This document shows positions 28,563-56,986 of a DNA stretch of 64,000 bases, piece after piece. Position numbers and translations under genes: made by a program. The notes under the pieces were generated by a model. That model was not told the DNA's origin. It saw only the letters and a list, made by a program, of their open reading frames with translations, and ran no database searches. The stretch is taken from IMG/VR virus record IMGVR_UViG_3300045125_000071, positions 124,001-188,000 of that record; one strand, given 5' to 3'. Every line of letters starts with the position of its first letter. The first letter of the stretch is position 1.

Positions 28563-28577
28563 AAACTAGACAAAATC
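28563..28577. repeat. cassette palindrome 1 (right arm only)
   Basis: AAACTAGACAAAATC; left arm replaced by the G-tract. Confidence 0.85.
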
Positions 28578-28698
28578 CAGCCGCCCCCCGTACCTGCTGA
28601 ACTTCAGCATGGCTTTAACAAATGATTAACCTATTGTGTGTTCGTATATGGATATGTTTCGTATATTTGCTTATTCAATCACCTAAACCTTTTACGCC

Positions 28699-28989
28699 AT
28701 GCAAATCAAGACTTCTTACGCGCACCCAGTGAACTTCAGTGTTGATGTGAACATCGAAGACGGTTTCATCAGTTATAATGTTAAGGTATCCGAAACCGAG
28801 TTGGAGATTACCTACTCATATGCCGATACTCGCACGGGTGTAACCAAGGCGCAGATTAATGCGGGTGCAGACTTCATCCGCGAGAGCCTCAAAAATCGCA
28901 CCCTGCACCTGCCCACCTTCATTCCCATTGCAGACATCGCAGATGTTGACCAATGGGATGGTGTTGCGGAGCAAGTGTATCCCGAATAG
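28699..28989 (+). CDS. cassette 1 hypothetical protein (paralog of 31820)
   Basis: Lies between promoter and terminator; LHLPTFIP...QWDG shared with 31820. Confidence 0.85.
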   Translation: MQIKTSYAHPVNFSVDVNIEDGFISYNVKVSETELEITYSYADTRTGVTKAQINAGADFIRESLKNRTLHLPTFIPIADIADVDQWDGVAEQVYPE

Positions 28990-29068
28990 GCTCACCACAC
29001 ACATTCAATGCCCACCGATTGGTGGGCATTTTTTTTGCCCCAACCCGACGGGGACTCGACCGCCGTTA

Positions 29069-29113
29069 GATTTTCTCTAGTTTCAAAGTGCTATGATAAA
29101 ACTAGAGAAAATC
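29069..29113. repeat. cassette palindrome 2
   Basis: GATTTTCTCTAGTTT-N15-AAACTAGAGAAAATC (compensatory change in both arms). Confidence 0.95.
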
Positions 29114-29255
29114 TCGGAAGCCCCAGATTCCTCCTCGGTTGGTTTAACAATACATTAGCGATGTATTAACATGATATTAGCAAAAGGTGAGCGTATCTTT
29201 GTGGCTCACCTAAACCACCGCATGAGTCGAGCGGTTCACCAAACGACACCACACC

Positions 29256-29699
29256 ATGGCAAACCCAATGCCCGCTGCTTCTCTCCTGCACCTGATTTCC
29301 GAAGAAACCAAAGAACTGAAGGGCGCACCCTTCACCGTGCGTTCCAAGCGCACGGGCGTAGACTTCACCTACAAGGTGACCCAGTCCGTTTTCAAGGACG
29401 TGCGCTACTTTCACGTCAAGGTCGAGAAGATGCTTGATGGCATCCTCGGCTTTTACTACCTCGGCTACTTCCGTGCCGATGAGGGGAAGATTTTTGCCAA
29501 AGGTCGTGTGCCCGTGGAAACCCCTTCTGCCCTCGCCATTGGCTGGGTGCTGCGCAAGGCATTCGCAAAGGATGCTGCTGCGCTTGATGAGGGCGTGGAA
29601 GCGTTCAACCTCGGTTCGTGCTGCGTGTGTGGTAAGCGTCTGTCCGATGCTCGTAGCATCGAGTTGGGTATTGGTCCCGTCTGCCGTGGTGAGCGTTAA
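29256..29699 (+). CDS. DUF6011-like zinc-finger domain protein
   Basis: C-terminal CCVCGKRLSDARSIELGIGPVC. Confidence 0.7.
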   Translation: MANPMPAASLLHLISEETKELKGAPFTVRSKRTGVDFTYKVTQSVFKDVRYFHVKVEKMLDGILGFYYLGYFRADEGKIFAKGRVPVETPSALAIGWVLRKAFAKDAAALDEGVEAFNLGSCCVCGKRLSDARSIELGIGPVCRGER

Positions 29700-29935
29700 T
29701 CGCTTTCATCCCCGATATTGAAACCCCGTCCATGTGACGGGGTTTTTTGTTTCTATCCCTAAACGAATTTAAAGCCTTTTACGGGCGTTTCTTGTTCCAA
29801 TAGTATCCTACTATTGTTTTCTGATTATCGTCTATTGTAGGGGGTTCTAAAACGATTAAGCAAAACGGACAACCAAAACGTGGGAACAGACATTCTTGCT
29901 GTGAGGCTGAAGCGACGGGACGCTTCCCCAGTTCG

Positions 29936-29980
29936 GATTTTGTCTAGTTTTATGTTATTGTTGTGAAACTAGACAAAATC
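29936..29980. repeat. cassette palindrome 3
   Basis: Consensus arms, N15. Confidence 0.95.
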
Positions 29981-30123
29981 TTGCCGCCCGTACCTGCTGA
30001 GCGATGGGGTTTGTCTTTAACAATACATTAGCAATGTATTAACATTTTATTTGGAAATTGTGTGCGTATCTTTGTGGCTCACCTAAACCACCGCATGAGC
30101 CGAGCGGACAAACGGCACACACC

Positions 30124-30495
30124 ATGGGTCTTGATATGTACATTCAGCGCCGAGTTAATGGCGGTCAGTCCGAGCAGGTTGGCTACTTTCGGAAATTCTA
30201 CGCCCTCCATGATTGGATTGGCATTCATGTGGGTGAGGTTGAGAACCTTGCCCCCGTTGTCCTGTCCGAGGAAGTCCTTCAGAACTTGTCCATGACGTTG
30301 GAAAATGTCATGGATTGTCCCGAATTGGCTCGCCTGACCTTTCCACCCGAAAAGAACTACGGGGATATTGACCCGTGGTATTTCCATCGGGTCGGAACTG
30401 CCTTGGAGTTGGTGTGGAAACTCCGTATGGAGGCTTCCGTTGCCCTTCAAGAGCGTGGCGAAGTCCACGAACTTGAATATGTGGCGTGGTGGTGA
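30124..30495 (+). CDS. MGLDMY-family phage protein (paralog of 53013)
   Basis: MGLDMY...VGYFRKFYALHDWI...YVAWW. Confidence 0.8.
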   Translation: MGLDMYIQRRVNGGQSEQVGYFRKFYALHDWIGIHVGEVENLAPVVLSEEVLQNLSMTLENVMDCPELARLTFPPEKNYGDIDPWYFHRVGTALELVWKLRMEASVALQERGEVHELEYVAWW

Positions 30496-30717
30496 CCTTG
30501 CCCGTATCCCACAAAGCCCGTCCGATGTGACGGGCTTTTTTATTTTCATCCCTTACCCAATTTCAAGCCCATTACGGGCTTTTTTCATTACTGATGGTAT
30601 CTACATATCACCCGAAGATTATCGTTCAATTTTGGGCGTTATAATGCGTTTAAGCAAATGGTCATCCAAAACGTGGGAACAACGATTTCCCTGGCGACGG
30701 GACGCTTCCCCAGTTCG

Positions 30718-30765
30718 GATTTTGTCTAGTTTTAGATTTTAATAGTTTCAAAACTAAACAAAATC
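30718..30765. repeat. cassette palindrome 4
   Basis: N18, right arm AAACTAAACAAAATC. Confidence 0.95.
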
Positions 30766-30959
30766 TGCCCGTCCAAAGCCAGGTCGCAGACTGCCAAAAT
30801 CCTTTAACAATACATTAGCACATCATTAACATTATATTTGCATATTGCACCCTATCTTTGTTGCAGTTCTTTGATAGACGGACTATCTTACATAGCCTTG
30901 CAGGTGCAAGGTGGGTAGATGATATTTTAACTTTTTTTCACCTAAAAAAACCTAAACAC

Positions 30960-31556
30960 ATGGCACAGAAAGTTCAAATGAGCGTACTTGATTTCGTATT
31001 ATTTATGCTCCGTTTCACGCACCGCCACATGGCAGGATTGACCGCTGAAACCTGCCTTGATAATGCCCAAATGAAGGGTGGTAAAGCCACCGCTGCAAAG
31101 TATGGTGGTTATGTCACGAAGTTGTCACGGATAACGTGGAATCACTCCGTGGACTACGAAAACGCAGTCAAAAACAAACTTGTAAAGTTTGGTCTTGACC
31201 CCGAAGCGTTTATCGCAGGTGAGCATAGGTTTGCAAAACGTGCGCTTTGTGACGGAAAGTTGACCACTATGGCTTATCACAAAGATGATGAACATCTACC
31301 TATATCCGAGCGTAGGTGGTATCTTGTGGCTTACATCATGGACGGCATCGTAAAAAGCAAATATGCTTACACGGATGCCAACGGCAACGAAGTTGATGCT
31401 GATACGCTCCATGCCGACCTTTATGATAAGCGTTCACGCAAACAAGCGGATGCAGGTCTAACGGAAATTGAGCAGCAGGTAATCTATCGGAATTATTCGG
31501 TGGAAAATTTGCGGAACATTCGCTTTGAAGGCTACGATATTGACATCGTGCAGTAA
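30960..31556 (+). CDS. hypothetical phage protein
   Basis: Start MAQKVQMSV after a CCTAAACAC leader; terminator follows. Confidence 0.8.
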   Translation: MAQKVQMSVLDFVLFMLRFTHRHMAGLTAETCLDNAQMKGGKATAAKYGGYVTKLSRITWNHSVDYENAVKNKLVKFGLDPEAFIAGEHRFAKRALCDGKLTTMAYHKDDEHLPISERRWYLVAYIMDGIVKSKYAYTDANGNEVDADTLHADLYDKRSRKQADAGLTEIEQQVIYRNYSVENLRNIRFEGYDIDIVQ

Positions 31557-31648
31557 TACAATGCCACCCGAAAGGGTGGCATTTTTTTTGGCTAAAATTT
31601 AACGTTAACAAACCCTTAACAATCGGAAAATCTGGCTGCCACCGTTCG

Positions 31649-31693
31649 GATTTTGTTTAGTTTTAGATTGGTATTACAAAACTAGACAAAATC
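31649..31693. repeat. cassette palindrome 5
   Basis: Left arm GATTTTGTTTAGTTT, N15. Confidence 0.95.
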
Positions 31694-31819
31694 TGCGCTG
31701 GGGACGCTGGCTGAGGCACGGGTGGGTTGCGCTTTAACATATGATTAACCCCAAGTATTATGTGGGGATGAATATGCGATGTATATTTGCTTATTCAATC
31801 ACCCCTAAATCTTTAAGTC

Positions 31820-32109
31820 ATGCAAATTAATGGTTCTTACGCCCTCCCAAGCATCTTCAATGTTTCAGTTGAATTCAGTGACAACAGGAACATCACCTAC
31901 AAGGTAGAAGCCGACATCGAAAAAAGGAAGTCGCTATTTCCGTGGATTTGGCTGATGGCACTTTCACGGATGCGGAACGTGAGGAAGGTGCGAATTTCAT
32001 CTGTGCGAGTCTTGTGGATGGCTCTTTACATCTGCCCTCGTTCATCCCTCTGTCCGATGTGGAGGACATTGAGCAGTGGGATGGCATCCATGAGGCTCTC
32101 CAAGCCTGA
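31820..32109 (+). CDS. paralog of 28699 protein (frameshift in A-run at ~31920)
   Basis: Shifted frame gives EEGANFICASLVDGSLHLPSFIPLSDVEDIEQWDGIHEALQA*, which aligns to 28699. Confidence 0.8.
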
Positions 32110-32206
32110 CAATCCTCGAAACGGATTCGATGCCCGACCGAAAGGTTGGGCATTTTTTGCGCTTGAGTGGCGGAAGTTCTGGATACCTGCTGGTTCCCAG
32201 TCAGAG

Positions 32207-32251
32207 GATTTTGTTTAGTTTTAGAAGGGTATTACAAAACTAGACGAAATC
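32207..32251. repeat. cassette palindrome 6
   Basis: N15, right arm AAACTAGACGAAATC. Confidence 0.95.
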
Positions 32252-32384
32252 CAACAGGTGACAGCCAGGAAGTGTGCAACGTATTTGCGGTGGATATGTT
32301 GTGAAAACATTAACATTATATTTTTGGTTATGGTCATGTTCTTTGTATATTTGATTATTATTACACCTTAAACCTTTAATCGTT

Positions 32385-32711
32385 ATGAACAACTACATCA
32401 TCATCAGTCGCACCTTTGTTGAGGTTACCCCCGATAGCGCAGAGGACGGGGAATTTTCCGACCACGGCTTCATTGACGAGCGTGTTGAGGTCACCTTCCC
32501 CGAATTGGTAGACCTCATGTACGAACACTGCCACCCCTCATGTTCCCCCAATGACGGAGGAACGGATGTATGGTACTCAACCGAGATGTACACTTCCGAT
32601 TTTGGGGATGGAACGAACCGCCAAGAAAGCATCCACTTCCATAAGGATAACACCCCGAACATCGCCAAATATTGGAAAATGGCGGCAAGGGCGGCAGGAC
32701 TTGTGGAGTAG
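32385..32711 (+). CDS. hypothetical phage protein
   Basis: 108 aa between promoter and terminator. Confidence 0.8.
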   Translation: MNNYIIISRTFVEVTPDSAEDGEFSDHGFIDERVEVTFPELVDLMYEHCHPSCSPNDGGTDVWYSTEMYTSDFGDGTNRQESIHFHKDNTPNIAKYWKMAARAAGLVE

Positions 32712-32789
32712 TCGCCCACCACCCCCGAACATCCCAGCAGAGATGCTGGGATTTTTTTGCTCTAATAGAACTTCAGGCCCACAGCTCCA

Positions 32790-32838
32790 GATTTTATCTA
32801 GTTTTAAAACTAATCGTATTACAAAACTAGACGAAATC
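32790..32838. repeat. cassette palindrome 7
   Basis: N19. Confidence 0.95.
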
Positions 32839-32967
32839 TACCCGTCCCGCGTGCCTCAAGTGCCTGAAGTACCACTTGTTCCCCTTTGTGATAACATTAA
32901 CAATCAATTTGATTGTTTTTAGTTTATGTGGTGTATATTTGCTTATTCAATCACCTAAACCAATTTT

Positions 32968-33084
32968 ATGAAGCACTTTATTTTTCTTCTCATTCTTACG
33001 GCTATTTATTTCATTTTGTTTCTCACAATTTTTCTGCCATATTTCTTGTGGCATTTCAAAAACACCCCCAACTCGCTCATGTGA
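32968..33084 (+). CDS. small membrane peptide (38 aa)
   Basis: MKHFIFLLILTAIYFILFLTIFLPYFLWHFKNTPNSLM, directly after promoter. Confidence 0.6.
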   Translation: MKHFIFLLILTAIYFILFLTIFLPYFLWHFKNTPNSLM

Positions 33085-33154
33085 ATAAGGGTTACATTCA
33101 GAAAGTAAGAAAAGTTTTCATAAACGATTCAAAACGCCCCCAAACTTTCTGAAC

Positions 33155-33286
33155 ATGAAAAAAATCATCTTCCTTCTGTTCGTATCCATTTTTTTTGCAT
33201 CTTGCATGACCACTCGCACAAAAGTCGGTGGGTGCTACTACTACTATCGACCGAGCATGAAAAACGCCAAATGGCGTTATCTATAA
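33155..33286 (+). CDS. small lipoprotein (43 aa)
   Basis: MKKIIFLLFVSIFFAS-C signal peptidase II lipobox; terminator follows. Confidence 0.7.
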   Translation: MKKIIFLLFVSIFFASCMTTRTKVGGCYYYYRPSMKNAKWRYL

Positions 33287-33372
33287 TTTTCATATGGCAA
33301 GCATCGTTCCCCCTGACATTTCCATGTCGGGGGTTTTTTTGTCCACCAGCATAACCTGGCTGGATGAATCTG

Positions 33373-33417
33373 GATTTTGTCTAGTTTTACAACAGTATTG
33401 CCAAACTAGACGAAATC
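33373..33417. repeat. cassette palindrome 8
   Basis: N15. Confidence 0.95.
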
Positions 33418-33531
33418 TGGAGCTGTTCGAGTCGTCCCTCAACAGTTCGAGACGTTATGAGAACATTAACACTCGATTTGTTTGTGTTTCGGTATTTATC
33501 AGTATATTTGTATAACAAAACACAATACGCC

Positions 33532-33693
33532 ATGAAAAAAGATTATCTACTACGGATTTCCATGTTGCTTCTGCACACCATCTATGTGCTGACCGCTTTT
33601 CCCATCTTGGTATTACAATCCATATGGAAATGGAAGGTGGAATTATTGGATAACCTTTTTACAATTACTTCAGACATTGGCGCATCCTTCTAA
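33532..33693 (+). CDS. small membrane protein (53 aa)
   Basis: One TM helix; lies between promoter and terminator. Confidence 0.65.
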   Translation: MKKDYLLRISMLLLHTIYVLTAFPILVLQSIWKWKVELLDNLFTITSDIGASF

Positions 33694-33839
33694 AAATGTT
33701 CTTCAAGGAGCGTGAACCCAATAGTTACGCAAACTATTATCAGCACATCAGTTTAAAATAGTTCAAGGGTTATAGGTGAAACCCCGTCCGAAAGGGCGGG
33801 GATTTTTTGCCCTGAAGAATACGGCGGCTTCCCTGGTGA

Positions 33840-33884
33840 GATTTTGTCTAGTTTCAAAGTGTTATGATAAAACTAGACGAAATC
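33840..33884. repeat. cassette palindrome 9
   Basis: N15. Confidence 0.95.
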
Positions 33885-33993
33885 TGACCTGATGCGGGCT
33901 GGACCTGCTGGTGGTGGGTATCTTGTGAAAACATTAACATTTGAAAACATCGTATTACCGATATGGGGTGTATATTTGCATAAACAATAAGAC

Positions 33994-34179
33994 ATGAAAC
34001 TGAATATCGCAACAAAACTGAACGAACTTCAAGAGGAGGTTCTGAAAATTGAAAACGAGGATGCCCGTCACTTTGAAATCAAAGAAATTGCCGAGATGGT
34101 AACGGCATGGTATGATGGAAATGTCGAGAGGCGCAGAAGGATTGCAGAAGAAAAAAACTTCACCAAACAACACCAGTAA
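33994..34179 (+). CDS. hypothetical protein
   Basis: Follows promoter. Confidence 0.7.
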   Translation: MKLNIATKLNELQEEVLKIENEDARHFEIKEIAEMVTAWYDGNVERRRRIAEEKNFTKQHQ

Positions 34180-34180
34180 T

Positions 34181-34339
34181 ATGCACATCACAAGACATCG
34201 CACGAAACTCGCATGGAGGTGCTTCAAAAAGTATCTTCAAGACAAAAGCATCCCAAATGTGTTCGCTCGTGTTTATTGGGCGTTCATGTCCGCACGTTGG
34301 TATTTCCTTTATCCCAAATGTAGTTTCCAAAAAGATTAG
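34181..34339 (+). CDS. small basic protein (52 aa)
   Basis: MHITRHRTKLAWRCF...; coupled to upstream stop. Confidence 0.55.
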   Translation: MHITRHRTKLAWRCFKKYLQDKSIPNVFARVYWAFMSARWYFLYPKCSFQKD

Positions 34340-34437
34340 GGTTTAGGTGTTTTTTCATAGGTTAGCAATCATCCCCCGACATTTCCATGTCGGGGATTTT
34401 TTTGCTCAGCCAATGAAGTCCTGGTTTCCCCGTGTAA

Positions 34438-34482
34438 GATTTTGTCTAGTTTTAAAAACGTATTACAAAACTAGACAAAATC
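34438..34482. repeat. cassette palindrome 10
   Basis: Consensus arms, N15. Confidence 0.95.
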
Positions 34483-34592
34483 TGACCTGATGCTGTGCAG
34501 GTAGGTTGCACAGCAAAACGGTTTAACAACGTGTTAACAACATCATTCGGATATGGGGTGTATATTTGCATAAACATTAAAACCTAAACACT

Positions 34593-34918
34593 ATGCCCTA
34601 CATCAGCGAGAAAAAACATGGATTAAGACAGACGGTTGGAGAGGTTACGTTCAACCCGTCAATGCGGTGGGATGCTGCAACTGCACAGGGGATTGGAGTG
34701 ATTCACCCTGCCCCACAAGTGTGGTCTTGGAGGAAATCAACGGTTTCAAAAAACTGTTGAAGGCAAACGGCATCCAACACAAAAGAGTGGTAACACAATC
34801 GAGCAACGTGTTCATGGTGAAGGTGAACATATTGGTTCACCCGAACGACAGGGAACGCGCCTTGGAATTGGCAAAAGAGCATGAGCAAAACACCCGACTA
34901 TTCTATCGGGTGTCATAA
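34593..34918 (+). CDS. hypothetical Cys-rich protein (frameshift in A-run)
   Basis: MPYISEKK joins TWIKTDGWRGYVQPVNAVGCCNCTGDWSD... Confidence 0.7.
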
Positions 34919-35021
34919 GATGGTGTTTTTTCATAGGTTAGCAACCCCCCGATGTTTCCACATTGGGGGTTTTTTTGTCCGTCTGGAGGAGGTTCTGGTA
35001 CCTGCTGGTTTCCAGTCAGAG

Positions 35022-35069
35022 GATTTTGTTTAGTTTTGAAACTAGTGGAATATAAAACTAGACAAAATC
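35022..35069. repeat. cassette palindrome 11
   Basis: N18. Confidence 0.95.
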
Positions 35070-35186
35070 TTACCAGAAGCGGGCTGGCTCCTCCTGAACA
35101 CGGGCTTTAACATAACATTAGCAATCGGAATGTTCGGTATTACGTTATCCGTTGTATATTTACATATCACCAAAAACAAAAAACAC

Positions 35187-35522
35187 ATGACAACTGCAAT
35201 CGCTCAAACCTGCAACCAACTCGGCAAAAGGGAATTTGACCCTGCCGAAACTTTGGCGTACTTCAAGGCTCACGGCTTTCTCTTTTGGTCGTGGGGTGCT
35301 TCAAAATTCACCAACTTCAATAACTTGGGGTTGTGCTTCAAAGTGAATGGGCATCACCACAAGGGGTACGTTTTCGTGGCTCTTGATTGGTCGGACACCT
35401 TCGATGTCCATATCATCAACACGCAAGGTCGGGTGCTTGACACCTACAATGAGGTTTACATTGACGAACTTTTCAACGTCATTGACAACCGAATTGAGAA
35501 GATAAAGGACTACGTGCGATAA
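35187..35522 (+). CDS. hypothetical phage protein
   Basis: WSWG...GL.FKVNG..HKG.V...DTFDV...VYIDEL...ID..IE. Confidence 0.8.
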   Translation: MTTAIAQTCNQLGKREFDPAETLAYFKAHGFLFWSWGASKFTNFNNLGLCFKVNGHHHKGYVFVALDWSDTFDVHIINTQGRVLDTYNEVYIDELFNVIDNRIEKIKDYVR

Positions 35523-49834: not shown

Positions 49835-49854
49835 TTCAAATAAAAACAAACAGA

Positions 49855-50541: not shown

Positions 50542-50624
50542 TGTTGTTGTGTGTTTTGTTTATCCCCATCCGAAAGGGTGGGGATTTTTTGTCCTTCAGG
50601 TTTCTCCTGGCTAATTAGCGGCTG

Positions 50625-50667
50625 GATTTTGTCTAGTTTTGTGTGTGATATAAAACTAAACAAAATC
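50625..50667. repeat. cassette palindrome 20
   Basis: N13. Confidence 0.95.
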
Positions 50668-50759
50668 TTTCCAGGTTGGTTGGCTAATTCTTCAGATAAA
50701 AAAAATTTTTGGTTATGTAAATAAAAGTTGTATATTTGCTGAAACAAAAACCAAACACA

Positions 50760-51275
50760 ATGAAAATCGAATTAAAAAACGTCAAGTTCTCCGAGTTCGC
50801 ATCCGAGGAAACCAACTGCTTCGCTGCCGACCTTTATGTGGATGGTAAGAAGGTTGGATTCTGCAAGAATGATGGTCATGGTGGTAACACCTGGGTTTAC
50901 AATTCCGATGCAAATACGCTGACCAAATTCCGTGAGGTTGAAGAATATTGCAAGACGCTTCCGCCAATTGAATTCGGTGATTTTTCAATTCCATCCAATT
51001 TGGAAAATGTTGTCGATGGTTTGTTCGAAGAGTGGTTGAAAGAGAAAGACAAAAAACGGATGCAAAAGAAGTTGGAGAAGTCCATGCTCAAAGGCATCTG
51101 CATTGAAACCGAGAATGGTTTCACGTTGGCAACATTCAAGATGGTTGGCAAGGTTGTCCCATTGGCTGATGCGTTAAAGGTTCAGCCAGTCCTCGAACAC
51201 ATCAAACAATTCTGTATTACAGAGAAGCAAAAAGGGAATAAAATTCTGAATACAAATTTGCCTTTTGAAATATAA
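50760..51275 (+). CDS. hypothetical phage protein
   Basis: LKNVK..EF.SEET.CF.A.LY.DGKK.G...NDG.GG. Confidence 0.8.
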   Translation: MKIELKNVKFSEFASEETNCFAADLYVDGKKVGFCKNDGHGGNTWVYNSDANTLTKFREVEEYCKTLPPIEFGDFSIPSNLENVVDGLFEEWLKEKDKKRMQKKLEKSMLKGICIETENGFTLATFKMVGKVVPLADALKVQPVLEHIKQFCITEKQKGNKILNTNLPFEI

Positions 51276-51304
51276 TTGTATTACCTTTACATAAACAATA
51301 CACT

Positions 51305-51559
51305 ATGTCATTGAAAGATGCTTTTACAACGGAATTAATTCGCGAACTCAGGAACAGGGGTGTAATCAACATCCTGTGGACGAATGAAGATATTATCGAA
51401 ACGGCAAAAAATCTTGAAGTCGAATTGACGGATGAAGAGATTGATGATGTTACCACATTGATGGAAGAAAAACATGATGCCAATTATGGTGTCAACTGGT
51501 CATTCATTGAGGAATGTATTTGGCAAGTTATTGATAACCGAAAAAAATCAAAAACATGA
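51305..51559 (+). CDS. hypothetical protein
   Basis: W..EDI......LTDEE...V......HDA..GV.W. Confidence 0.75.
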   Translation: MSLKDAFTTELIRELRNRGVINILWTNEDIIETAKNLEVELTDEEIDDVTTLMEEKHDANYGVNWSFIEECIWQVIDNRKKSKT

Positions 51560-51760
51560 GCAAAAAAACATACGAAGTTTCTTTTGCAACTCTCCGTTCA
51601 GGCAGAGAATCCGCTTGAGGCAGCGAAAGAGGCCAATAGATTAGCCTTCAATGAAGGTGACACATTCATCTACGATGTTGAAGACGAAGAGACGGGCGAG
51701 AAGTTCACCGTAGATTTGTCCGAAAACGATGAGGATGCAGTTTTACCCAACAACGATTAA
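51556..51760 (+). CDS. small acidic protein (frameshifted)
   Basis: MSKKTYEV...VQAENPLEAAKEA... read by eye. Confidence 0.55.
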
Positions 51761-51767
51761 ATTTCAT

Positions 51768-52166
51768 ATGAAAACAAAAATCGTAACAACACAAGCAATT
51801 CGTGAAACCGCATACGACATCGCGGAAGAAATGACTGAAATGTTGGGAACGGAATTCACGGTCACCCTTGTCGAGGGTATGCCACTTGGTGACTATTACC
51901 GCATCGAAGGAGAGATAACTGCGGAACAGTTCGAGGAAATGCCTGACATCGAGAACGAATGGCTTTTCGAGAACCCGACCAACGAATGGGTGTCGAAGTT
52001 CGGGAAACTTAGCGATACCGAATATTCCAAGACAATCAAGGATACTGTTTTCTACTACAACACCTATTTGTTTGGTGGGAGTCATTATCAGATACTAGTA
52101 AGTGGTGAAATGGGTGGCAAGTACGATGTGGAAGAACCCGAAGATATTGCGAGAATATCAAGATAA
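51768..52166 (+). CDS. hypothetical acidic protein
   Basis: Start MKTKIVTT; terminator follows. Confidence 0.7.
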   Translation: MKTKIVTTQAIRETAYDIAEEMTEMLGTEFTVTLVEGMPLGDYYRIEGEITAEQFEEMPDIENEWLFENPTNEWVSKFGKLSDTEYSKTIKDTVFYYNTYLFGGSHYQILVSGEMGGKYDVEEPEDIARISR

Positions 52167-52251
52167 TTTGTGTTTTGTGTTTTGTGCTCCCCCGCTGTTT
52201 TTACGGCGGGGGTTTTTGTTCCCGCTGTACGCCCGCCGAGCCAACTGTTCG

Positions 52252-52298
52252 GATTTTGTCTAGTTTTAAAATCGCGTATGACAAAACTAGACAAAATC
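52252..52298. repeat. cassette palindrome 21
   Basis: Consensus arms, N17. Confidence 0.95.
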
Positions 52299-52378
52299 TT
52301 TTCAGGGACACCAGGCCCAAAAATTTTTTGGTATATCAGAAATAATGTATTACCTTTGTGTTCTAAAACACACACATC

Positions 52379-52681
52379 ATGCAAGACGAAAAAACAGTTG
52401 AAATCGTTAATCAGATTACCAATTATGTGAATACCTTTTCCAGAAGGGATGATTTCAATAAGGTAATGTCCACGGAACATCGCACTCTGCAACAATCTTT
52501 CACACGTTTGTGCCTGAAATGGTTGGAACACGTTGCTCAAGATGAATATAAGACAGACCCACGGAATGAAGCCAGCAAGAGTACTGCAAAAGAATTGATA
52601 TCAAAGTTCAGAGAAGAGAAAGGATTTTTACCGTCAGAATTTTTACCTTTGTGTAAAAAATATTTGGTGAACAAAAAATAA
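52379..52681 (+). CDS. hypothetical protein
   Basis: HRTLQQSFTRLC motif; follows promoter. Confidence 0.75.
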   Translation: MQDEKTVEIVNQITNYVNTFSRRDDFNKVMSTEHRTLQQSFTRLCLKWLEHVAQDEYKTDPRNEASKSTAKELISKFREEKGFLPSEFLPLCKKYLVNKK

Positions 52682-52712
52682 CTTTATACTTTTACATTCT
52701 AAAACATACACA

Positions 52713-52988
52713 ATGACAAATTTGGAAAATTACGATTTTGAAATGTTTTCCCCTGCTGGGAACAAAGCCTGTCAAAGTCTTGTAAAGAAGGTATTCAGGA
52801 AGATTGAAGGCAAGACAAGGCTTACCGAAGATGATGTCTATAAACACATCAGAGAAGGTATTAAGAAGGTTAAGGAAAAACATTCTGAAGTGTATGACAG
52901 CGAACCAGGTTGGCACATCCAAGAATGGGTGAATAAGAAACTGAAAGAGGTTGGCTATGGCTTCGAGGTATCAAGGTACGATTTCTAA
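52713..52988 (+). CDS. hypothetical protein
   Basis: ORF track, in operon. Confidence 0.7.
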   Translation: MTNLENYDFEMFSPAGNKACQSLVKKVFRKIEGKTRLTEDDVYKHIREGIKKVKEKHSEVYDSEPGWHIQEWVNKKLKEVGYGFEVSRYDF

Positions 52989-53012
52989 TAAACAAAACAA
53001 AAACCTACAACT

Positions 53013-53585
53013 ATGGGATTGGATATGTATCTGAACAAGCGCACCTACGTTAAGAACTGGTCGCACATGGATAAGAGTGAATTGCACACGGTGACCATCA
53101 AAATGGGTGGTAAGAAAAGGGCTGACATTAAGCCCGAACGCGTGTCTTACATTATCGAGGAGGTCGCCTATTGGCGCAAATTCAACGCTCTGCATGGGTG
53201 GTTTGTCACCAATGTTGCCGATGGTGTTGACGACTGCAAGGAGGTCTATGTTTCTCATGAAAATTTGATGGAGTTACATGAGACCCTTCTGAAAGTTCAG
53301 GAAATCCTGAACGCTGCGCCCACCGTACAAAGGGAGGTCTCAAACGGGTGGCAAACGGATGGAAATGGCGGGATAAAGGAAACCACGGCTATGATACTTG
53401 TTTACGATTGTGAGGAAGAAATCAATGAGGTGTTACCGCCGACCCCAGGTTTTTTCTTTGGAAGCCAAGAAATCGATGGATGGTTCAAACAGAATGTTGA
53501 CGAAACGGTTACCGTAATCGGTGACATTCTGAAAGAAATCGAATTCGGTTATTCATCAGATTATTATTACGAGGCATCGTGGTAA
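53013..53585 (+). CDS. MGLDMY-family phage protein (paralog of 30124)
   Basis: MGLDMYL...EVAYWRKFNALHGWFV...LP...GFFFGS...YYEASW. Confidence 0.85.
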   Translation: MGLDMYLNKRTYVKNWSHMDKSELHTVTIKMGGKKRADIKPERVSYIIEEVAYWRKFNALHGWFVTNVADGVDDCKEVYVSHENLMELHETLLKVQEILNAAPTVQREVSNGWQTDGNGGIKETTAMILVYDCEEEINEVLPPTPGFFFGSQEIDGWFKQNVDETVTVIGDILKEIEFGYSSDYYYEASW

Positions 53586-53635
53586 ACGGTGGGGAGCAAT
53601 CCCCACCTTTTTTCATTTCATAAAACTTAAAACAC

Positions 53636-53983
53636 ATGAAAACATTGAACGAACTGAAAGAACAATTGCAAGAGGATATTATCACCTATCTTGATGACAT
53701 CGTGGCTGAAGATGAGGTAACCGAATTGTGTCAAAAAGTGGTAAACAGGGTTAACGAACTAAAACATAATATTCAAACAGAATACAGAGTATATTGTATT
53801 GACATGGATGATGATGAATTATATGCCGAAGATTTCGACGGTGTATGGGATTTGTCAGACGAAAAATTCATTGAACACGCTGAAAGGCAAGGTCTTGTAT
53901 GGTCTCTGGAAGGTTTCCAAGAAGCGTTCAATCAGGACGGTGTATCCGATACATGGATTATGCGTATTATCAAACATTCATAA
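53636..53983 (+). CDS. hypothetical acidic protein
   Basis: F...AE.QG.VWSL.GF. Confidence 0.7.
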   Translation: MKTLNELKEQLQEDIITYLDDIVAEDEVTELCQKVVNRVNELKHNIQTEYRVYCIDMDDDELYAEDFDGVWDLSDEKFIEHAERQGLVWSLEGFQEAFNQDGVSDTWIMRIIKHS

Positions 53984-53995
53984 ATTCAAACAAAT

Positions 53996-54193
53996 ATGGC
54001 CAAAAGATACCAGGTCATTTCGCCAGACGGGTTCACCATCGAATTCGATGTGTGGGCATATCCATCAAAGAAAAAGGCAAAAGAGGCTTTTGAGAAGTGG
54101 AAGGAAAGATATACCAGACAAGGATATTATTCATCCGTGAAGTATGGTAGAATTCCTTTAGCCGAATTGGAAAATTATTGTCAAATTGGATAA
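53996..54193 (+). CDS. hypothetical protein
   Basis: V.SPDG..I...; R...QGYYSS...IPL. Confidence 0.7.
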   Translation: MAKRYQVISPDGFTIEFDVWAYPSKKKAKEAFEKWKERYTRQGYYSSVKYGRIPLAELENYCQIG

Positions 54194-54205
54194 AATTAAA
54201 ACAAA

Positions 54206-54391
54206 ATGAAACTTCGTAACTACATCCTGACTCTGGACGCAAAAGTTCAAAACCTTTACAAGAATACGATTGAGACAATGCATATGCAAGCATATAATTT
54301 GCGTGATGCAAAGGTGAAATCTTCAAGAATTGCACGTGATTACAACATGAAAGTTGTAAGTGTAAAACTGAACAGAGCGATTCATTTTTAA
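54206..54391 (+). CDS. hypothetical protein
   Basis: ORF track, in operon. Confidence 0.65.
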   Translation: MKLRNYILTLDAKVQNLYKNTIETMHMQAYNLRDAKVKSSRIARDYNMKVVSVKLNRAIHF

Positions 54392-54403
54392 ATTATAAAC
54401 ACA

Positions 54404-54778
54404 ATGAAAAAGATTCTTGAAAAAATCAGAAAAGCTTACGAGAAACACGGACAGGCTGCGGCTTTCGATGTCGCCAACGAACATGGGTTGAAGTACGAGT
54501 ACTGTTGGACTTGTGAAACGTCAAGCCCCGCTGTTGACCATCAATGTGCTATCTGTGGATGCGACACAACAACGCGTATGACACATACCGAGTTTTTCGA
54601 AAGAACGGATTACATTACTCTGGGACAGCAGAAGCTAACGCTGTTGGCTATTCTGGATAAAGGTGGATTGCACTCAACCCAGGTCGAAGACATTGAAGGA
54701 TTAATAAATTTCATCGACAGCTTTCAAGACACAGCCATTGATAATGGTATGAAAGAAGAAGATGTTTTTATAAATTAA
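54404..54778 (+). CDS. hypothetical protein with CxxC...CxxC
   Basis: YEYCWTCE...CAICG. Confidence 0.7.
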   Translation: MKKILEKIRKAYEKHGQAAAFDVANEHGLKYEYCWTCETSSPAVDHQCAICGCDTTTRMTHTEFFERTDYITLGQQKLTLLAILDKGGLHSTQVEDIEGLINFIDSFQDTAIDNGMKEEDVFIN

Positions 54779-54828
54779 ATTTGCGTAATTGATATAAACG
54801 TATTACCTTTATACCAAAATTCAGAAAC

Positions 54829-55029
54829 ATGGCACTCAAAAAACACATTCCAACAATCGAAGACAGAATCCAAGAAAGGAAAGATGTTCATGCAATGTTG
54901 AAGACATCGATGAAAGAAGTAAAAAGTCTTATCAATTGCCTGGATAAAATCGACGAGCAAATAAAAAAATTGGAAAAAAGAAAACGAAAAAAAGAAAGTG
55001 TGAACCAAAGTTCAAAAAGATTGTTCTAA
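54829..55029 (+). CDS. small coiled-coil protein
   Basis: ORF track. Confidence 0.6.
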   Translation: MALKKHIPTIEDRIQERKDVHAMLKTSMKEVKSLINCLDKIDEQIKKLEKRKRKKESVNQSSKRLF

Positions 55030-55056
55030 ATAAGTAACCAACAAAAACCAGATAAA

Positions 55057-55329
55057 ATGAAAGTACAAGTAGTTTGCAAAGTTCCGAGCGGACATCAGCC
55101 AAAACCAGTCAAAATTCTTTGCGGTGGCTGCAAGAAAAACCCCGATGGTTCGTTTTCATTTGAAATGGAATTCGATACCAAGGTTGATGCAACCCAATGG
55201 TTGTATGATAGGGCATATGAAATCGCAAAAGATGATAAGGAACTCAAGCGGCTCAATTCGCAAATCAGGGTTCACAAGAAACTGAGCTATGATGTTGCGA
55301 CAGCAAAAATCATGCGTGTCAAAAACTAA
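55057..55329 (+). CDS. hypothetical protein
   Basis: ORF track. Confidence 0.65.
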   Translation: MKVQVVCKVPSGHQPKPVKILCGGCKKNPDGSFSFEMEFDTKVDATQWLYDRAYEIAKDDKELKRLNSQIRVHKKLSYDVATAKIMRVKN

Positions 55330-55331
55330 TC

Positions 55332-55514
55332 ATGTCAAAAAGAGTTATCAAGTACGAAGTAATCGTCTGTGGTGAGGTCATCAAGGTCGAAAACCTAAAA
55401 GAGGCTGAGGACAGGTTGAAGAGGCACGAACTATCGGACTTCGCACCATCCTACATCCTCCGAAAGGAGTTCTCCCAGAAAGGGAATTTGCTGGATGTGA
55501 TAATGGTGGGTTAA
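55332..55514 (+). CDS. hypothetical protein
   Basis: ORF track; terminator follows. Confidence 0.6.
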   Translation: MSKRVIKYEVIVCGEVIKVENLKEAEDRLKRHELSDFAPSYILRKEFSQKGNLLDVIMVG

Positions 55515-55674
55515 CTCATTGCGGATGGGTTCATGAGGACAAGGAGATGCCGAAAGGTGTCTCCTTTTTTATGAAATTATTATCAAATATTTTGTTAATG
55601 TGGAAAAGATTATATATTTTTGCACGTACAATACACAATATGTTGATATTTTTGCACAAGTAAATCAAATCAAA

Positions 55675-55905
55675 ATGAGTAAAGCCGAAACCGTAAACCT
55701 AACAGACAAGTTGAACAGAAAACACATACGACTTGTCCTGTCCGATGACGGAAAGGGCGTATGGGAACGATGGGAGTCAAAGGACAAACATAAGTGGGTT
55801 AAAACCCATGAATCTCTTTCTGTTCAAAATGTTATCAAGGAACAGGAGGAAGTTAAAACCCGAAACTATTTCAATCTATTCAGAATAATCTTTTCCAAAC
55901 GATAG
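55675..55905 (+). CDS. hypothetical protein
   Basis: Start MSKAETV; terminator follows. Confidence 0.6.
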   Translation: MSKAETVNLTDKLNRKHIRLVLSDDGKGVWERWESKDKHKWVKTHESLSVQNVIKEQEEVKTRNYFNLFRIIFSKR

Positions 55906-56001
55906 TTCTGTGAGATAGCTATTGTTGGTTTTAGTTCGAAAGCCCCGCAGTTTTGTGGGGCTTTTTTATTTGTTCGAGAGTCGTCCTGGTTAACAGCTCC
56001 A

Positions 56002-56043
56002 GATTTTGTCTAGTTTTGGAACGATTTAAAACTAGACAAAATC
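56002..56043. repeat. cassette palindrome 22
   Basis: Consensus arms, N12. Confidence 0.95.
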
Positions 56044-56111
56044 CATCCAGGGAAAAAATTTTGCATATCAAAGTATTATTTGTATATTTGTGTAAACAAA
56101 ACATATCACAT

Positions 56112-56872
56112 ATGAAGTTTAAATCAATTGCGGAAGCCAAGAGACAAACGGGCTTATCTTACCTGGGCAATGTTAACCACAGCGCAAAGCATGAAAAGAA
56201 CGCGAAGTACAATGAGCTTGTATATGCATTATATCTGGCTCCAGCTAAGCTGTCTGGTTACAATGTTTGTCCAAAGTCGAACGCCGAATGTCGGTTATTA
56301 TGTCTGAATGAAAGCGGACAAAATAAGATGGACAAGGGGAATATCAATAATGCCCGAATCAAAAAAACAAAACTGTTTTTCGAGGACAGACAGTTTTTCA
56401 TGGAATGGCTGGTGGCTGAAATCAAACGCTACAAAACCAAAGCCAAAACGATGGGGTATCATTTCAGCATTCAGATTGAATAATACGTCGGATATCAGTC
56501 CCGAACAATTTCATATGGAAATCGATGGGGAACGGAAAAATATACTACAGCTGTTTCCCAGATGTACAGTTTTACGATTATACCAAAGTGGACAATCGAA
56601 TTGACATTGTCAACAAACATACCAACTATGACCTTACCTTCTCGTATGACGGGTACAATTGGGAGGTCTGTGAAAAGATGCTGAAGAACAATGTTCGGGT
56701 GGCGGTTGTCTTCGCAAAGCAACTTCCTGAACAATGGCGGGGACATAACGTCATCAGCGGGGACGACTACGATGTGCGCTTCCGTGACGACAGGAACGTC
56801 ATTGTCGGCCTGAAGTTCAAGCAGGTACGGAACAAGTATACCAAGGACATGAAGTTCGTGGTGCAGGACTAA
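56112..56872 (+). CDS. GP88-like protein (mycobacteriophage gene product 88 family; frameshifted)
   Basis: LYLAPA..SG.NVCP....C...CL..SG; RLN.TSDI; FYDYTK; YDLTFS; D..D.RF.D...VGLK.K. Confidence 0.7.
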
Positions 56873-56939
56873 CGGTTCAGGGATAATGGTCCATCCCCCA
56901 GGAAAAACCTGGGGGATTTTTTTATCTCAGCACGAGCAA

Positions 56940-56986
56940 GATTTTGTCTAGTTTTAAAACCGCGTATGACAAAACTAGACAAAATC
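56940..56986. repeat. cassette palindrome 23
   Basis: Consensus arms, N17. Confidence 0.95.

What the first reader, a model, noticed from the sequence alone, without database searches (positions are those of the whole stretch)
28563..56986. Phage-borne array of ~23 palindrome-delimited, self-expressing gene cassettes (main candidate novel system)
Seen in sequence: 22 full copies and 1 half copy of GATTTTGTCTAGTTT-N10-19-AAACTAGACAAAATC, spaced 0.5-4 kb apart over 28 kb and absent from the rest of the window. Each sits after an intrinsic terminator and about 40-100 bp (mostly 85-98) upstream of a TAnnTTTG -7 box. Each unit is therefore palindrome, promoter, 1-11 small co-oriented genes, terminator. 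Established: TAnnTTTG is the Bacteroidota primary-sigma -7 element, and mobile promoter/stem-loop cassettes (PeSLs) shuffle early genes in T4-like phages. I do not recognise this palindrome as attC, dif/pdif, REP or a CRISPR repeat. Inference: a modular early-gene (host-takeover/anti-defence) cassette platform in which the palindrome is either a recombination site or a shared operator for one phage regulator. No recombinase gene lies in this window.
Basis: partly seen in the sequence, partly recalled or inferred. Interest (0 to 1): 0.95.

Follow-up and report, generated by a model that had tools for sequence, protein, structure and literature searches.

The report
Repeated palindrome modules between phage early genes
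A 251-kb uncultured phage of Bacteroidota-type bacteria marks the gap between 23 early-gene units with one conserved palindrome; related phages carry the same kind of element with different arm sequences and gain, lose and reorder genes at these modules, so it is a real element resembling known phage regulatory cassettes, though its molecular role is still unproven.

Summary
There are 22 full copies and 1 half copy of GATTTTGTCTAGTTT-N10-19-AAACTAGACAAAATC, all at 28,563-56,986 (45 arms found, 0.48 expected by chance). Almost every copy lies between an intrinsic terminator and a Bacteroidota-type TAnnTTTG promoter.

The window is part of IMG/VR contig 3300045125_000071. This arm sequence occurs in no other record searched. 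The architecture is not unique, though. About 80 loci of related large phages were found. The closer relatives have terminator, inverted repeat, promoter modules with related but lineage-specific arms.

- **Arms are read in trans.** Lone arms sit beside promoters in L013. A lone right arm ends a conserved boundary element in all four lineages aligned. Arms that cannot form a hairpin still co-evolve with the paired ones, so they are probably protein-binding sites and not only hairpin formers.
- **Cassettes move at the modules.** Seven of seven inspected indels between two 90%-identical relatives are gene cassettes joined at arm/promoter modules. Cassette order differs across the clade.
- **New motif.** The strand-specific 8-mer GTAT[GT]ACA lies in hairpin loops, at start codons and inside genes.

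No recombinase or attC-like features were found. This is best described as a new variant of T4-type promoter/stem-loop (PeSL) cassettes with an added operator-like palindrome. The mechanism is inferred, not shown.

The parts
28440..28577 (+). Conserved boundary element at the left edge of the early block: C-run repeats (ATTGACCCC, TTAGACCCCC), then G-run repeats (GGGGGGATAC, GGGGGAGGGGGTA, GGGGGT), ending in the lone right arm at 28,563-28,577.
   Evidence: alignable with L008, L037 and L018. In each lineage it ends with that lineage's own right arm. The GC jump from 28% to 42% falls here.
28563..60165 (+). Early-gene block: about 23 co-oriented transcription units, 38-45% GC. The palindromes end at 56,986; the + strand genes and the 8-mer motif continue to about 60.2 kb.
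29069..29113 (.). Palindrome 1, spacer 15. Both arms carry the mirrored change G to C / C to G.
29936..29980 (.). Palindrome 2, spacer 15.
30718..30765 (.). Palindrome 3, spacer 18. Its loop is the exact reverse complement of the loop at 46,791.
31649..31693 (.). Palindrome 4, spacer 15, GTATTACA in the loop.
32207..32251 (.). Palindrome 5, spacer 15, GTATTACA in the loop.
32790..32838 (.). Palindrome 6, spacer 19, GTATTACA in the loop.
33373..33417 (.). Palindrome 7, spacer 15.
33840..33884 (.). Palindrome 8, spacer 15.
34438..34482 (.). Palindrome 9, spacer 15, GTATTACA in the loop.
35022..35069 (.). Palindrome 10, spacer 18.
36394..36442 (.). Palindrome 11, spacer 19, GTATGACA in the loop.
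38223..38264 (.). Palindrome 12, spacer 12.
39044..39088 (.). Palindrome 13, spacer 15, GTATTACA in the loop.
41511..41550 (.). Palindrome 14, spacer 10.
42076..42117 (.). Palindrome 15, spacer 12.
43272..43311 (.). Palindrome 16, spacer 10.
44910..44956 (.). Palindrome 17, spacer 17, upstream of the DUF932 gene.
46791..46838 (.). Palindrome 18, spacer 18. Its loop is the reverse complement of the loop at 30,718.
50625..50667 (.). Palindrome 19, spacer 13.
52252..52298 (.). Palindrome 20, spacer 17, GTATGACA in the loop.
56002..56043 (.). Palindrome 21, spacer 12. Its right arm ends 16 nt before the -33 TTTG.
56940..56986 (.). Palindrome 22, spacer 17, GTATGACA in the loop.
31671..60205 (+). 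Span holding all 27 forward copies of the 8-mer GTAT[GT]ACA: 8 in palindrome loops, others at or next to start codons (for example 35,919) and inside ORFs.
60074..60097 (+). Tandem GTATGACA-N8-GTATGACA after the last terminator, marking the right edge of the block.
   Evidence: L008, L016 and L037 have the same tandem arrangement.
50562..50590 (+). Example of the intrinsic terminator that precedes a palindrome (stem ATCCCCATCC/GGGTGGGGAT plus a T-run). The T-run ends 34 nt before the left arm.
50731..50738 (+). Example of the downstream -7 box (TATATTTG), preceded by an A-tract and TTTGG at -33. It lies 63 nt after the right arm.

Best explanation
The palindromes are this phage's version of a cis-element shared by a clade of uncultured large phages that use Bacteroidota-type promoters. 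In these phages every early transcription unit is bracketed by a composite module: intrinsic terminator, an inverted pair of 12-15 bp lineage-specific arms around a variable loop, then a host-type promoter (TTTG at -33, TAnnTTTG at -7).

Most likely the arms are binding sites for a phage-encoded, sequence-specific DNA-binding protein whose specificity co-evolves with its sites. Bound in the untranscribed gap between units, it would coordinate the whole block, either shutting it off or insulating units from one another once the protein is made.

Because the module is repeated about 23 times in direct orientation, it also supplies the homology at which gene cassettes are inserted, deleted and reordered, as with PeSLs in T4-type phages.

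Shown: the anatomy, the clade-wide conservation of the architecture with diverged arms, lone arms that co-evolve, and cassette indels at the modules in relatives. Inferred: that a protein binds the arms, what that does to transcription, and that the genes are early.
For: 1. The repeat is real and far more conserved than its surroundings. About 98% of arm positions match the consensus, while module flanks are 70-87% identical. Variation is confined to arm positions 6, 7 and 9, between invariant GATTT and TAGTTT blocks. That pattern fits sequence-specific recognition better than a pairing-only constraint.
2. Position. All copies lie between a terminator and a promoter, the one stretch expected not to be transcribed.
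3. Relatives colinear with the window have the same module with different but related arms: L008 ATAATGAATGGCC, L016 TTTCTGTGGCAA, L054 TTAGTGGGGCAA, L037/L011 TTGTTTGGCAA, L013/L032/L034 TTGGTTGGC.
4. Arms act without a partner. In L013 there are 35 left and 14 right arms, and single left arms sit about 17 nt upstream of the -33 element. In the window, L008, L037 and L018 a conserved boundary element ends in one right arm of that lineage's own sequence. A lone arm cannot form a hairpin yet tracks the paired arms.
5. In relatives the left-arm and right-arm consensus differ systematically and transversion mismatches are common: 148 against 66 transition mismatches, with no G-U bias (33 versus 33). 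Pairing itself is therefore not what is conserved there.
6. Cassette dynamics. All 7 inspected indels between L013 and L026 (90% identical) are cassettes, six with one gene, joined inside arm or arm-plus-promoter repeats. Homologues of window genes lie on either side of the conserved anchor gene in different phages, for example the SprT-like gene (19 upstream, 15 downstream).
7. Precedent, from my own knowledge: Cluster A mycobacteriophage repressors co-evolve with 20-30 stoperator sites per genome.
Against: - Spacers of 10-19 nt (4 to about 90 nt in relatives) rotate the two arms relative to each other, which a rigid dimer would not tolerate. This requires independent or flexibly linked binding.
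- In the window the arms are almost perfectly complementary, with no transversion mismatches and one mirrored double change at 29,069 (rough chance about 0.05). Transition mismatches lean towards G-U on the + strand (9 versus 3). Both features favour a base-paired form.
- Distance to the promoter varies (39-96 nt), while distance to the upstream terminator is tight (31-37 nt in 15 of 20 units). That is not the geometry of a classical activator or of a repressor overlapping the promoter.
- No DNA-binding protein was identified. No HTH or recombinase family was found among 68 ORFs scanned, and the two conserved core proteins gave confident models with no structural match.
- Nothing was tested at the bench, and the phage is uncultured.
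Confidence: 0.5

Rival explanations
1. The element works through its structure. The arms pair as a DNA cruciform, a single-stranded DNA hairpin or an RNA hairpin in read-through transcripts. The loop then presents the conserved 8-mer GTAT[GT]ACA to a strand-specific factor, such as an RNA-binding repressor or endoribonuclease that silences early messages (in the manner of T4 RegA/RegB), or a nicking enzyme.
For: - Spacer length is free while the arms stay complementary. There is a mirrored compensatory change at 29,069 and a 9:3 G-U bias on the + strand.
- Predicted stems are very stable: -35 to -43 kcal/mol with flanks, z-scores -3.4 to -5.6.
- The 8-mer sits in 8 of 22 window loops, always forward, and in 50 of 175 copies across 11 phages, although the arms differ.
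- The same 8-mer is strand-specific (27 forward, 4 reverse; 3.6 expected per strand). It overlaps or abuts start codons and is about 9-fold enriched inside ORFs against synonymous-codon shuffles: 14 observed, 1.63 expected, none of 2,000 shuffles reached it.
- Loops flip between orthologous hairpins and within the window (30,718 versus 46,791, 18 of 18 nt). The arms therefore do interact in vivo.
Against: - The hairpins lie after strong intrinsic terminators and before promoters, so little RNA should contain them.
- Lone arms co-evolve with paired arms.
- In relatives the two arms are often not complementary and show no G-U bias.
- Only 8 of the 22 window loops carry the 8-mer.
- Flank complementarity is a shared motif, not copy-specific (permutation p = 0.82).
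- No Rfam family matches.
Confidence: 0.25
2. The palindromes are dedicated sites for a site-specific recombinase or invertase encoded elsewhere in the genome. This would be an integron-like gene-capture platform or a set of mini-invertons, and it would actively excise, insert or flip cassettes.
For: - Cassette indels in relatives have junctions at the arms. In one case (L026 3,669/4,173 versus L013 3,138) the shared sequence is little more than the arm plus about 8 nt.
- Loop inversions recur.
- Like attC sites, the element is an imperfect inverted repeat with a variable centre.
Against: - No recombinase was found among the window ORFs scanned.
- There is no attC-type conserved core, and cassettes carry their own promoters and terminators.
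- Most junctions sit in 50-70 nt of duplicated module, including promoter sequence, as expected for homologous recombination.
- Small loop inversions between short inverted repeats also arise passively. This last point is from my own knowledge of minute hairpin inversions in chloroplast DNA.
- Loops of 10-19 nt are too short to hold a switchable promoter.
Confidence: 0.1
3. The palindromes are selfish miniature elements (REP- or MITE-like) that spread into intergenic gaps and do nothing for the phage.
For: They are short palindromes with near-identical copies, confined to intergenic DNA. One copy is inverted relative to another.
Against: - Relatives with different arms have the element at the same place in the module, and before homologues of the same genes. 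The DUF932 gene is preceded by one in the window (44,910) and in L008 (9,848).
- The arms form a graded family (ATT...GGC) rather than unrelated invaders.
- A lone arm is built into a conserved boundary element.
- No target-site duplications and no transposase were seen.
- Copies occur only in the early block, not in the rest of the window; an exact-match scan found no copy elsewhere in the 251-kb contig.
Confidence: 0.08

Closest known systems
PeSLs (promoter-early stem-loops) of T4-type phages (PMC2839356, PMC4122927)
   Same: Both are composite terminator-plus-strong-host-promoter modules repeated between small, mostly orphan early genes in a plastic region. Indels and replacements between close relatives have junctions inside the modules. 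Neither system has a dedicated recombinase.
   Different: There is no sequence or lineage relationship. The promoter here is the Bacteroidota -33/-7 type rather than sigma-70. Here an extra, highly conserved lineage-specific inverted repeat lies between terminator and promoter, and a second conserved 8-mer is present. Mini-circles could not be tested.
SAS/ESAS repeats of Cluster K mycobacteriophages (PMC3203893)
   Same: Both combine a short asymmetric motif tied to translation starts, in one orientation, with imperfect inverted repeats of about 17 bp separated by a variable spacer. Both are conserved across a phage cluster with lineage-specific positions, and in both the function is unknown.
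   Different: The ESAS inverted repeat lies immediately upstream of the start-associated motif, inside the transcript leader. Here the repeat lies upstream of the promoter and carries the 8-mer in its loop. The 8-mer here also occurs inside ORFs. Sequences and hosts are unrelated.
Stoperators of Cluster A mycobacteriophages (my own knowledge)
   Same: Both are 20-35 copies of a 13-15 bp site spread through intergenic gaps of one genome, with a consensus that co-evolves with the phage lineage.
   Different: Stoperators are single asymmetric sites in transcribed DNA, bound by the immunity repressor of a temperate phage. Here the sites are mostly inverted pairs in untranscribed gaps, and no repressor or sign of lysogeny was seen.
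Integron attC sites
   Same: Both are imperfect inverted repeats with a variable centre that separate gene cassettes in a co-oriented array.
   Different: There is no GTTRRRY/RYYYAAC core and no integrase or attI nearby. Cassettes here have their own promoters and terminators. The arms are nearly identical within one genome, whereas attC sequences differ from cassette to cassette.
N4-type hairpin promoters for a virion RNA polymerase (my own knowledge)
   Same: Both are hairpin-forming sequences upstream of early genes.
   Different: N4 hairpins have 5-7 bp stems and 3-nt loops and are the promoter itself. Here stems are 15-16 bp, loops are 10-19 nt, and a host-type promoter follows.

Membership tests
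PeSL-type regulatory cassette (as a kind, not as a homologous family) | A strong host-type early promoter is part of the repeated motif. | tested here: met
   A TAnnTTTG box follows 22 of 23 copies, with TTTG/TTTGG about 20 nt upstream in many. This is a consensus match only; activity was not tested.
PeSL-type regulatory cassette (as a kind, not as a homologous family) | An adjacent stem-loop acts as terminator for the upstream unit. | tested here: met
   GC-rich stems followed by T-runs precede 20 of the 22 full copies. Termination itself was not tested.
PeSL-type regulatory cassette (as a kind, not as a homologous family) | The motifs flank mostly orphan genes in a region that varies between relatives. 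| tested here: met
   Most array ORFs have no Pfam family. Presence and order vary across 80 loci.
PeSL-type regulatory cassette (as a kind, not as a homologous family) | Indels between close relatives have their junctions inside the motif. | tested here: inconclusive
   Met in relatives: 7 of 7 indels between L013 and L026. It could not be tested for the window's own palindrome, because no close relative exists in IMG/VR, GTDB genomes or JGI metagenomes.
PeSL-type regulatory cassette (as a kind, not as a homologous family) | Mini-circles form by exchange between flanking motifs. | not testable with these tools
   This needs reads from the source sample or inverse PCR.
Integron (attC / IntI) | Conserved R''/R' core (RYYYAAC / GTTRRRY) at the ends of the inverted repeat. 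| tested here: not met
   The arm ends are GATTTT / AAAATC; no such core is present.
Integron (attC / IntI) | A tyrosine recombinase with attI and a common promoter sits next to the array. | tested here: not met
   None was found among the window ORFs scanned. The rest of the 251-kb contig was not available.
Integron (attC / IntI) | Cassettes are promoterless. | tested here: not met
   Each unit has its own promoter-like and terminator-like sites.
CRISPR array | Regularly spaced repeats with spacers of about 25-50 bp. | tested here: not met
   Copies start 467-3,834 nt apart and have genes between them.
REP/BIME with RAYT transposase | A conserved 5' GTAG tetranucleotide plus palindrome, genome-wide extragenic spread, and an associated RAYT gene. 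| tested here: not met
   There is no GTAG head. Copies are confined to one 28-kb block. No HUH or transposase family was found among the ORFs scanned.
Known RNA families (Rfam 15) | A match at or above a family's gathering score. | tested here: not met
   No matches at gathering thresholds. Only sub-threshold noise at E up to 1.
Cluster K SAS/ESAS | A 13-bp start-associated sequence, with 17-bp inverted repeats immediately upstream of it. | tested here: not met
   The sequence and host differ, and the inverted repeat lies upstream of the promoter rather than next to the start-associated motif. This is a resemblance in kind only (PMC3203893).

The most novel reading that the evidence does not exclude
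The inverted repeat with GTAT[GT]ACA in its loop is the substrate of a dedicated phage enzyme, either a hairpin-recognising nickase/recombinase or an invertase. The 8-mer ends in ...TAT(T/G)AC, which to my recollection resembles the loop nick sites of HUH rolling-circle initiators. Such an enzyme would actively mobilise or flip early-gene cassettes. That would be an integron-like gene-capture system in large phages, with the strand-specific 8-mer as its cleavage or orientation signal.
Probability: 0.08. Interest if true: 0.9.

Novelty: new variant of a known kind. Interest (0 to 1): 0.6.

Why it matters
If the arms are operators of one co-evolving phage regulator, this clade offers a natural series in which a DNA-binding specificity and 20-35 sites per genome changed together. 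That would be useful for studying how regulons drift.

The modules also show that the 'regulatory cassette as recombination handle' strategy known from T4-type coliphages exists, in a more elaborate form, in large phages with Bacteroidota-type promoters. This helps explain how their anti-defence and host-takeover gene sets turn over.

The strand-specific 8-mer GTAT[GT]ACA is a separate, testable signal that was not found described in the papers searched. It marks start codons, hairpin loops and the end of the block.

None of this is proven function, and the phage is uncultured. The value is as a well-defined lead, not a discovery of a new class.

Tried and rejected
- **Close relatives of the window's palindrome.** An exact-pattern scan of IMG/VR found only the source contig. 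GTDB genomes gave 0 hits and JGI metagenomes 0. A shortened pattern gave nine unrelated single hairpins with no shared genes and nothing new in IMG/VR. Megablast against INPHARED phages found no match. A protein search found only distant DUF6915 homologues.
- **tRNA genes and known RNA families.** None were found.
- **Stop-codon recoding** as the reason for short ORFs in the low-GC flank. There was no clear gain from recoding any stop.
- **Copy-specific complementarity of the flanks.** It is absent: own partners pair no better than other copies' partners (p = 0.82). The flanks share CCTGG/CCAGG-like motifs instead.
- **G-U wobble bias as a test for an RNA hairpin.** Suggestive in the window (9:3) but absent in relatives (33:33).
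- **Promoter for a phage RNA polymerase.** The 8-mer overlaps or abuts start codons, so it cannot sit at -10 for those genes. Published jumbo-phage promoter motifs differ (PMC7598289).
- **Literature search for the 8-mer.** Nothing relevant.
- **Candidate trans factor among the conserved core genes.** AlphaFold models of 49,151-49,834 and 49,855-50,541 are confident (pLDDT about 90). Neither has a significant PDB fold or sequence match.
- **Chimeric assembly at 28.4 kb.** Rejected, because the sequence on both sides of the junction aligns with relatives.

Full report
**1. The observation**

A search for the arm GATTTTGTCTAGTTT with up to two mismatches finds 45 matches on both strands, against 0.48 expected from shuffles. 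All lie between 28,563 and 56,986. They pair into 22 palindromes with spacers of 10-19 nt, plus one lone right arm at 28,563-28,577.

- Thirty-one arms are perfect and 14 carry one substitution.
- All substitutions fall at arm positions 6, 7 or 9, between invariant GATTT and TAGTTT blocks.
- One copy (29,069) has the mirrored change G to C / C to G in both arms.
- The loop of 30,718 is the exact 18-nt reverse complement of the loop of 46,791.

Reading the flanks confirms the anatomy. A GC-rich stem with a T-run lies upstream of 20 of the 22 full copies. In 15 of those 20 the T-run ends 31-37 nt before the left arm. A TAnnTTTG box follows 22 of the 23 copies, 39-96 nt after the right arm, and a start codon lies typically 15-30 nt further on.

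The flanks share CCTGG/CCAGG-like motifs that extend the predicted stem. This complementarity is a common motif and not specific to each copy.

**2. Context**

The window is positions 124,001-188,000 of IMG/VR contig 3300045125_000071, which is 251,358 bp long.

GC content jumps from about 28% to about 42% at 28.4 kb. To the left are glycosyltransferases, two lysozyme-type enzymes, a NUDIX protein and a pterin dehydratase.

The array encodes mostly orphan proteins. The recognisable ones are DUF6011, a SprT-like protein, DUF4241, DUF932, an S-adenosylmethionine lyase, DUF6915 and a GP88-like pair. An HNH endonuclease lies on the minus strand. No recombinase or obvious DNA-binding regulator was found among 68 ORFs scanned. 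There are no tRNAs and no Rfam families.

**3. Relatives**

The exact palindrome occurs nowhere else in IMG/VR, in 185,579 GTDB species genomes or in JGI metagenomes. A shortened pattern found only unrelated hairpins.

Proteins do find relatives. The DUF932 protein leads to a 333-kb contig (L008) that is largely colinear with window 35-60 kb: 17 window ORFs have homologues there at 29-89% amino-acid identity. The DUF6915 protein (85-90% identical in the closer relatives, down to 55% in the most distant) finds 80 loci, many on contigs of 100-333 kb. No cultured relative exists in INPHARED.

**4. The same architecture with other arms**

L008 has terminator, palindrome, A-tract, then TTTGG...TAnnTTTG modules, with arms ATAATGAATGGCC. 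The other lineages are:

- L054: TTAGTGGGGCAA-N15-25-TTGCCCCACTAA about 15 times, in a layout very like the window.
- L037 and L011: TTGTTTGGCAA.
- L013, L026, L032 and L034: TTGGTTGGC.
- L016: TTTCTGTGGCAA.

The arms form a graded family with a 5' ATT block and, except in the window, a 3' GGC block.

Two facts show that arms are recognised individually. First, L013 has 35 left arms and 14 right arms. Single left arms sit about 17 nt upstream of the -33 element of promoters, while left-loop-right pairs sit after terminators. Second, a conserved non-coding boundary element opens the block in the window, L008, L037 and L018. It consists of C-run repeats, TATA, then G-run repeats, and it ends in one right arm of that lineage's own sequence.

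A lone arm that cannot form a hairpin still co-evolves with the paired arms. The same alignment also argues against an assembly chimera at the GC jump.

**5. Pairing or sequence?**

In the window the arms are almost perfectly complementary. Transition mismatches favour G-U on the + strand, 9 to 3. In relatives there is no such bias (33:33), transversion mismatches are frequent, and the left and right consensus differ. Pairing as such is therefore not conserved across the clade.

The arms do interact physically at some rate. Orthologous loops are flipped between L013, L026 and L032, and between two window copies.

**6. Cassette dynamics**

L013 and L026 are about 90% identical. I inspected seven of the breaks in their alignment. 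All seven are insertions of cassettes of about 300-500 nt, six of them with one gene, built as promoter, gene, often a terminator, then an arm.

- The junctions lie in the arm or in duplicated arm-plus-promoter sequence.
- The shared sequence at a junction is usually 50-70 nt. In one case it is barely more than the arm.

Across the clade, homologues of window genes lie on different sides of the conserved trio 48,776 / 49,151 / 49,855. The SprT-like gene is upstream of the trio in 19 loci and downstream in 15; the DUF4241 gene is upstream in 7 and downstream in 15.

This is the behaviour described for PeSLs in T4-type phages, where exchange between composite promoter/terminator motifs shuffles orphan genes and can produce mini-circles without a dedicated recombinase (PMC2839356, PMC4122927).

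**7. A second signal**

The 8-mer GTAT[GT]ACA occurs 27 times forward and 4 times reverse in the window, against 3.6 expected per strand. All forward copies lie between 31,671 and 60,198. It is enriched 10-20-fold, with the same strand bias, in the closer relatives but not in distant ones. No flanking positions are conserved except a preference for C or T just before it.

Its positions are as follows:

- It sits in 8 of the 22 window loops, next to the right arm and always forward.
- Across 11 phages, 50 of 175 copies lie in hairpin loops, although the arms differ.
- About a quarter of copies overlap or abut start codons, as GT-ATG-ACA or GTATTACA-ATG.
- The rest lie mostly inside ORFs, in all three frames. 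There it is about 9-fold above synonymous-codon shuffles: 14 observed, 1.63 expected, and none of 2,000 shuffles reached it. Two of those 14 fall in spurious ORFs that overlap palindromes.
- A tandem pair marks the right end of the block in the window (60,074-60,097) and in L008, L016 and L037.

I could not assign it a function. It was not found in the papers searched. It cannot be a -10 element for the genes whose start codon it overlaps.

**8. Interpretation**

The part I hold with high confidence (about 0.85) is that these are composite regulatory modules of a block of host-transcribed, probably early, genes, and that the modules are where cassettes are exchanged.

For the palindrome itself I favour an operator-like site for a co-evolving phage DNA-binding protein. 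The overall statement has confidence 0.5. Three observations support this: lone arms co-evolve, the invariant blocks look like recognition sequence, and the sites lie in untranscribed DNA.

The free spacer length, the near-perfect complementarity in the window and the conserved loop 8-mer keep a structure-dependent reading alive (0.25). A dedicated recombination system (0.10) and a selfish element (0.08) are less likely, for the reasons given under the rivals.

**9. Novelty**

The element is not attC, REP, CRISPR, an N4-type promoter or any Rfam family; each failed at least one defining feature I could test. It works like PeSLs and resembles the unexplained SAS/ESAS repeats of Cluster K mycobacteriophages (PMC3203893) and, by analogy, stoperators.

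I rate it a new variant of a known kind, with interest 0.6.

Noticed in passing
window 31,671-60,205 (27 forward copies); also L007-L037, L054, L080, L085: The strand-specific 8-mer GTAT[GT]ACA is enriched 10-20-fold. It lies in hairpin loops, over or next to start codons and inside ORFs in all three frames. It is about 9-fold above synonymous-codon shuffles and absent from the rest of the window. It was not found described in the papers searched.
   Followed up: partly
window 28,440-28,577; L008 about 2,270-2,420; L037 1-160; L018 1-125: A conserved non-coding boundary element (C-run repeats, TATA, G-run repeats GGGGGGATAC / GGGGGAGGGGGTA) opens the early block. Two relatives' contigs break within about 100 nt of it (contigs of L015 and L037), so it may mark a genome terminus, a terminal-repeat edge, or an origin or packaging site.
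   Followed up: partly
window about 28,400: GC content jumps from 25-30% (left flank) to 38-45% (array), while relatives' early blocks are 33-36% GC. The first ten cassettes (28.5-35 kb) are the most GC-rich and have almost no homologues in the relatives' loci. This is unexplained.
   Followed up: partly
window 60,074-60,097 and 60,040-60,057: After the last terminator of the block lie a tandem GTATGACA-N8-GTATGACA and, just before it, a perfect 18-bp palindrome ATGTTCCACGTGGAACAT. Both sit in a roughly 400-nt non-coding zone where + strand and - strand genes converge.
   Followed up: no
window 47,177-48,118 (- strand): An HNH-type endonuclease gene (phrog_681, E = 3e-47) lies on the opposite strand, inside the unit that holds the clade's most conserved genes. 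It is absent at this place in the relatives examined, so it is probably a homing endonuclease insertion.
   Followed up: partly
window 46,232-46,705; 39,214-39,681; 45,083-45,919; 29,256-29,699: Array genes with recognisable families are an S-adenosylmethionine lyase (a known anti-restriction function in phage T3, from my own knowledge), a SprT-like protein, DUF932 and DUF6011. This set is typical of early or anti-defence regions of phages and of plasmid leading regions.
   Followed up: partly
window 48,776-50,541: The trio DUF6915, a 227-aa protein and a 228-aa protein is adjacent in most of the roughly 80 loci. AlphaFold models of the two larger proteins are confident (pLDDT about 90), but neither has a significant PDB fold or sequence match.
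   Followed up: yes
window 28,577-36,600, 41,550 and 43,311 versus 38,264 and 46,838-56,100: There are two kinds of promoter upstream region. One has TTTAACA-N5-TTAAC(A) repeats (mostly the GC-rich first half). The other has an A-tract plus TTTGG at -33, as in relatives. These may be two regulatory classes.
   Followed up: no
window 29,721-29,935 and 30,513-30,717: In two units a repeated non-coding insert of about 200 nt (72% identical) separates the terminator from the palindrome. These are the two full copies with no T-run within 90 nt upstream.
   Followed up: no
L013, L026, L032 hairpin loops (for example L013 16,519 versus L026 16,049; L013 4,620 versus L032 1,906): Orthologous loops are inverted between closely related phages. 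Loops also fall into a few recurring types: an 8-mer pair spaced 20-21 nt, a 'taataaaatcaa' type with an inner hairpin, and an 'actttacag' direct-repeat type.
   Followed up: partly
window 56,112-56,483 and 56,525-56,872: A GP88-like protein (PF17338) is split into two adjacent ORFs. Relatives show the same two-ORF arrangement, so it is probably natural and not a sequencing error.
   Followed up: partly
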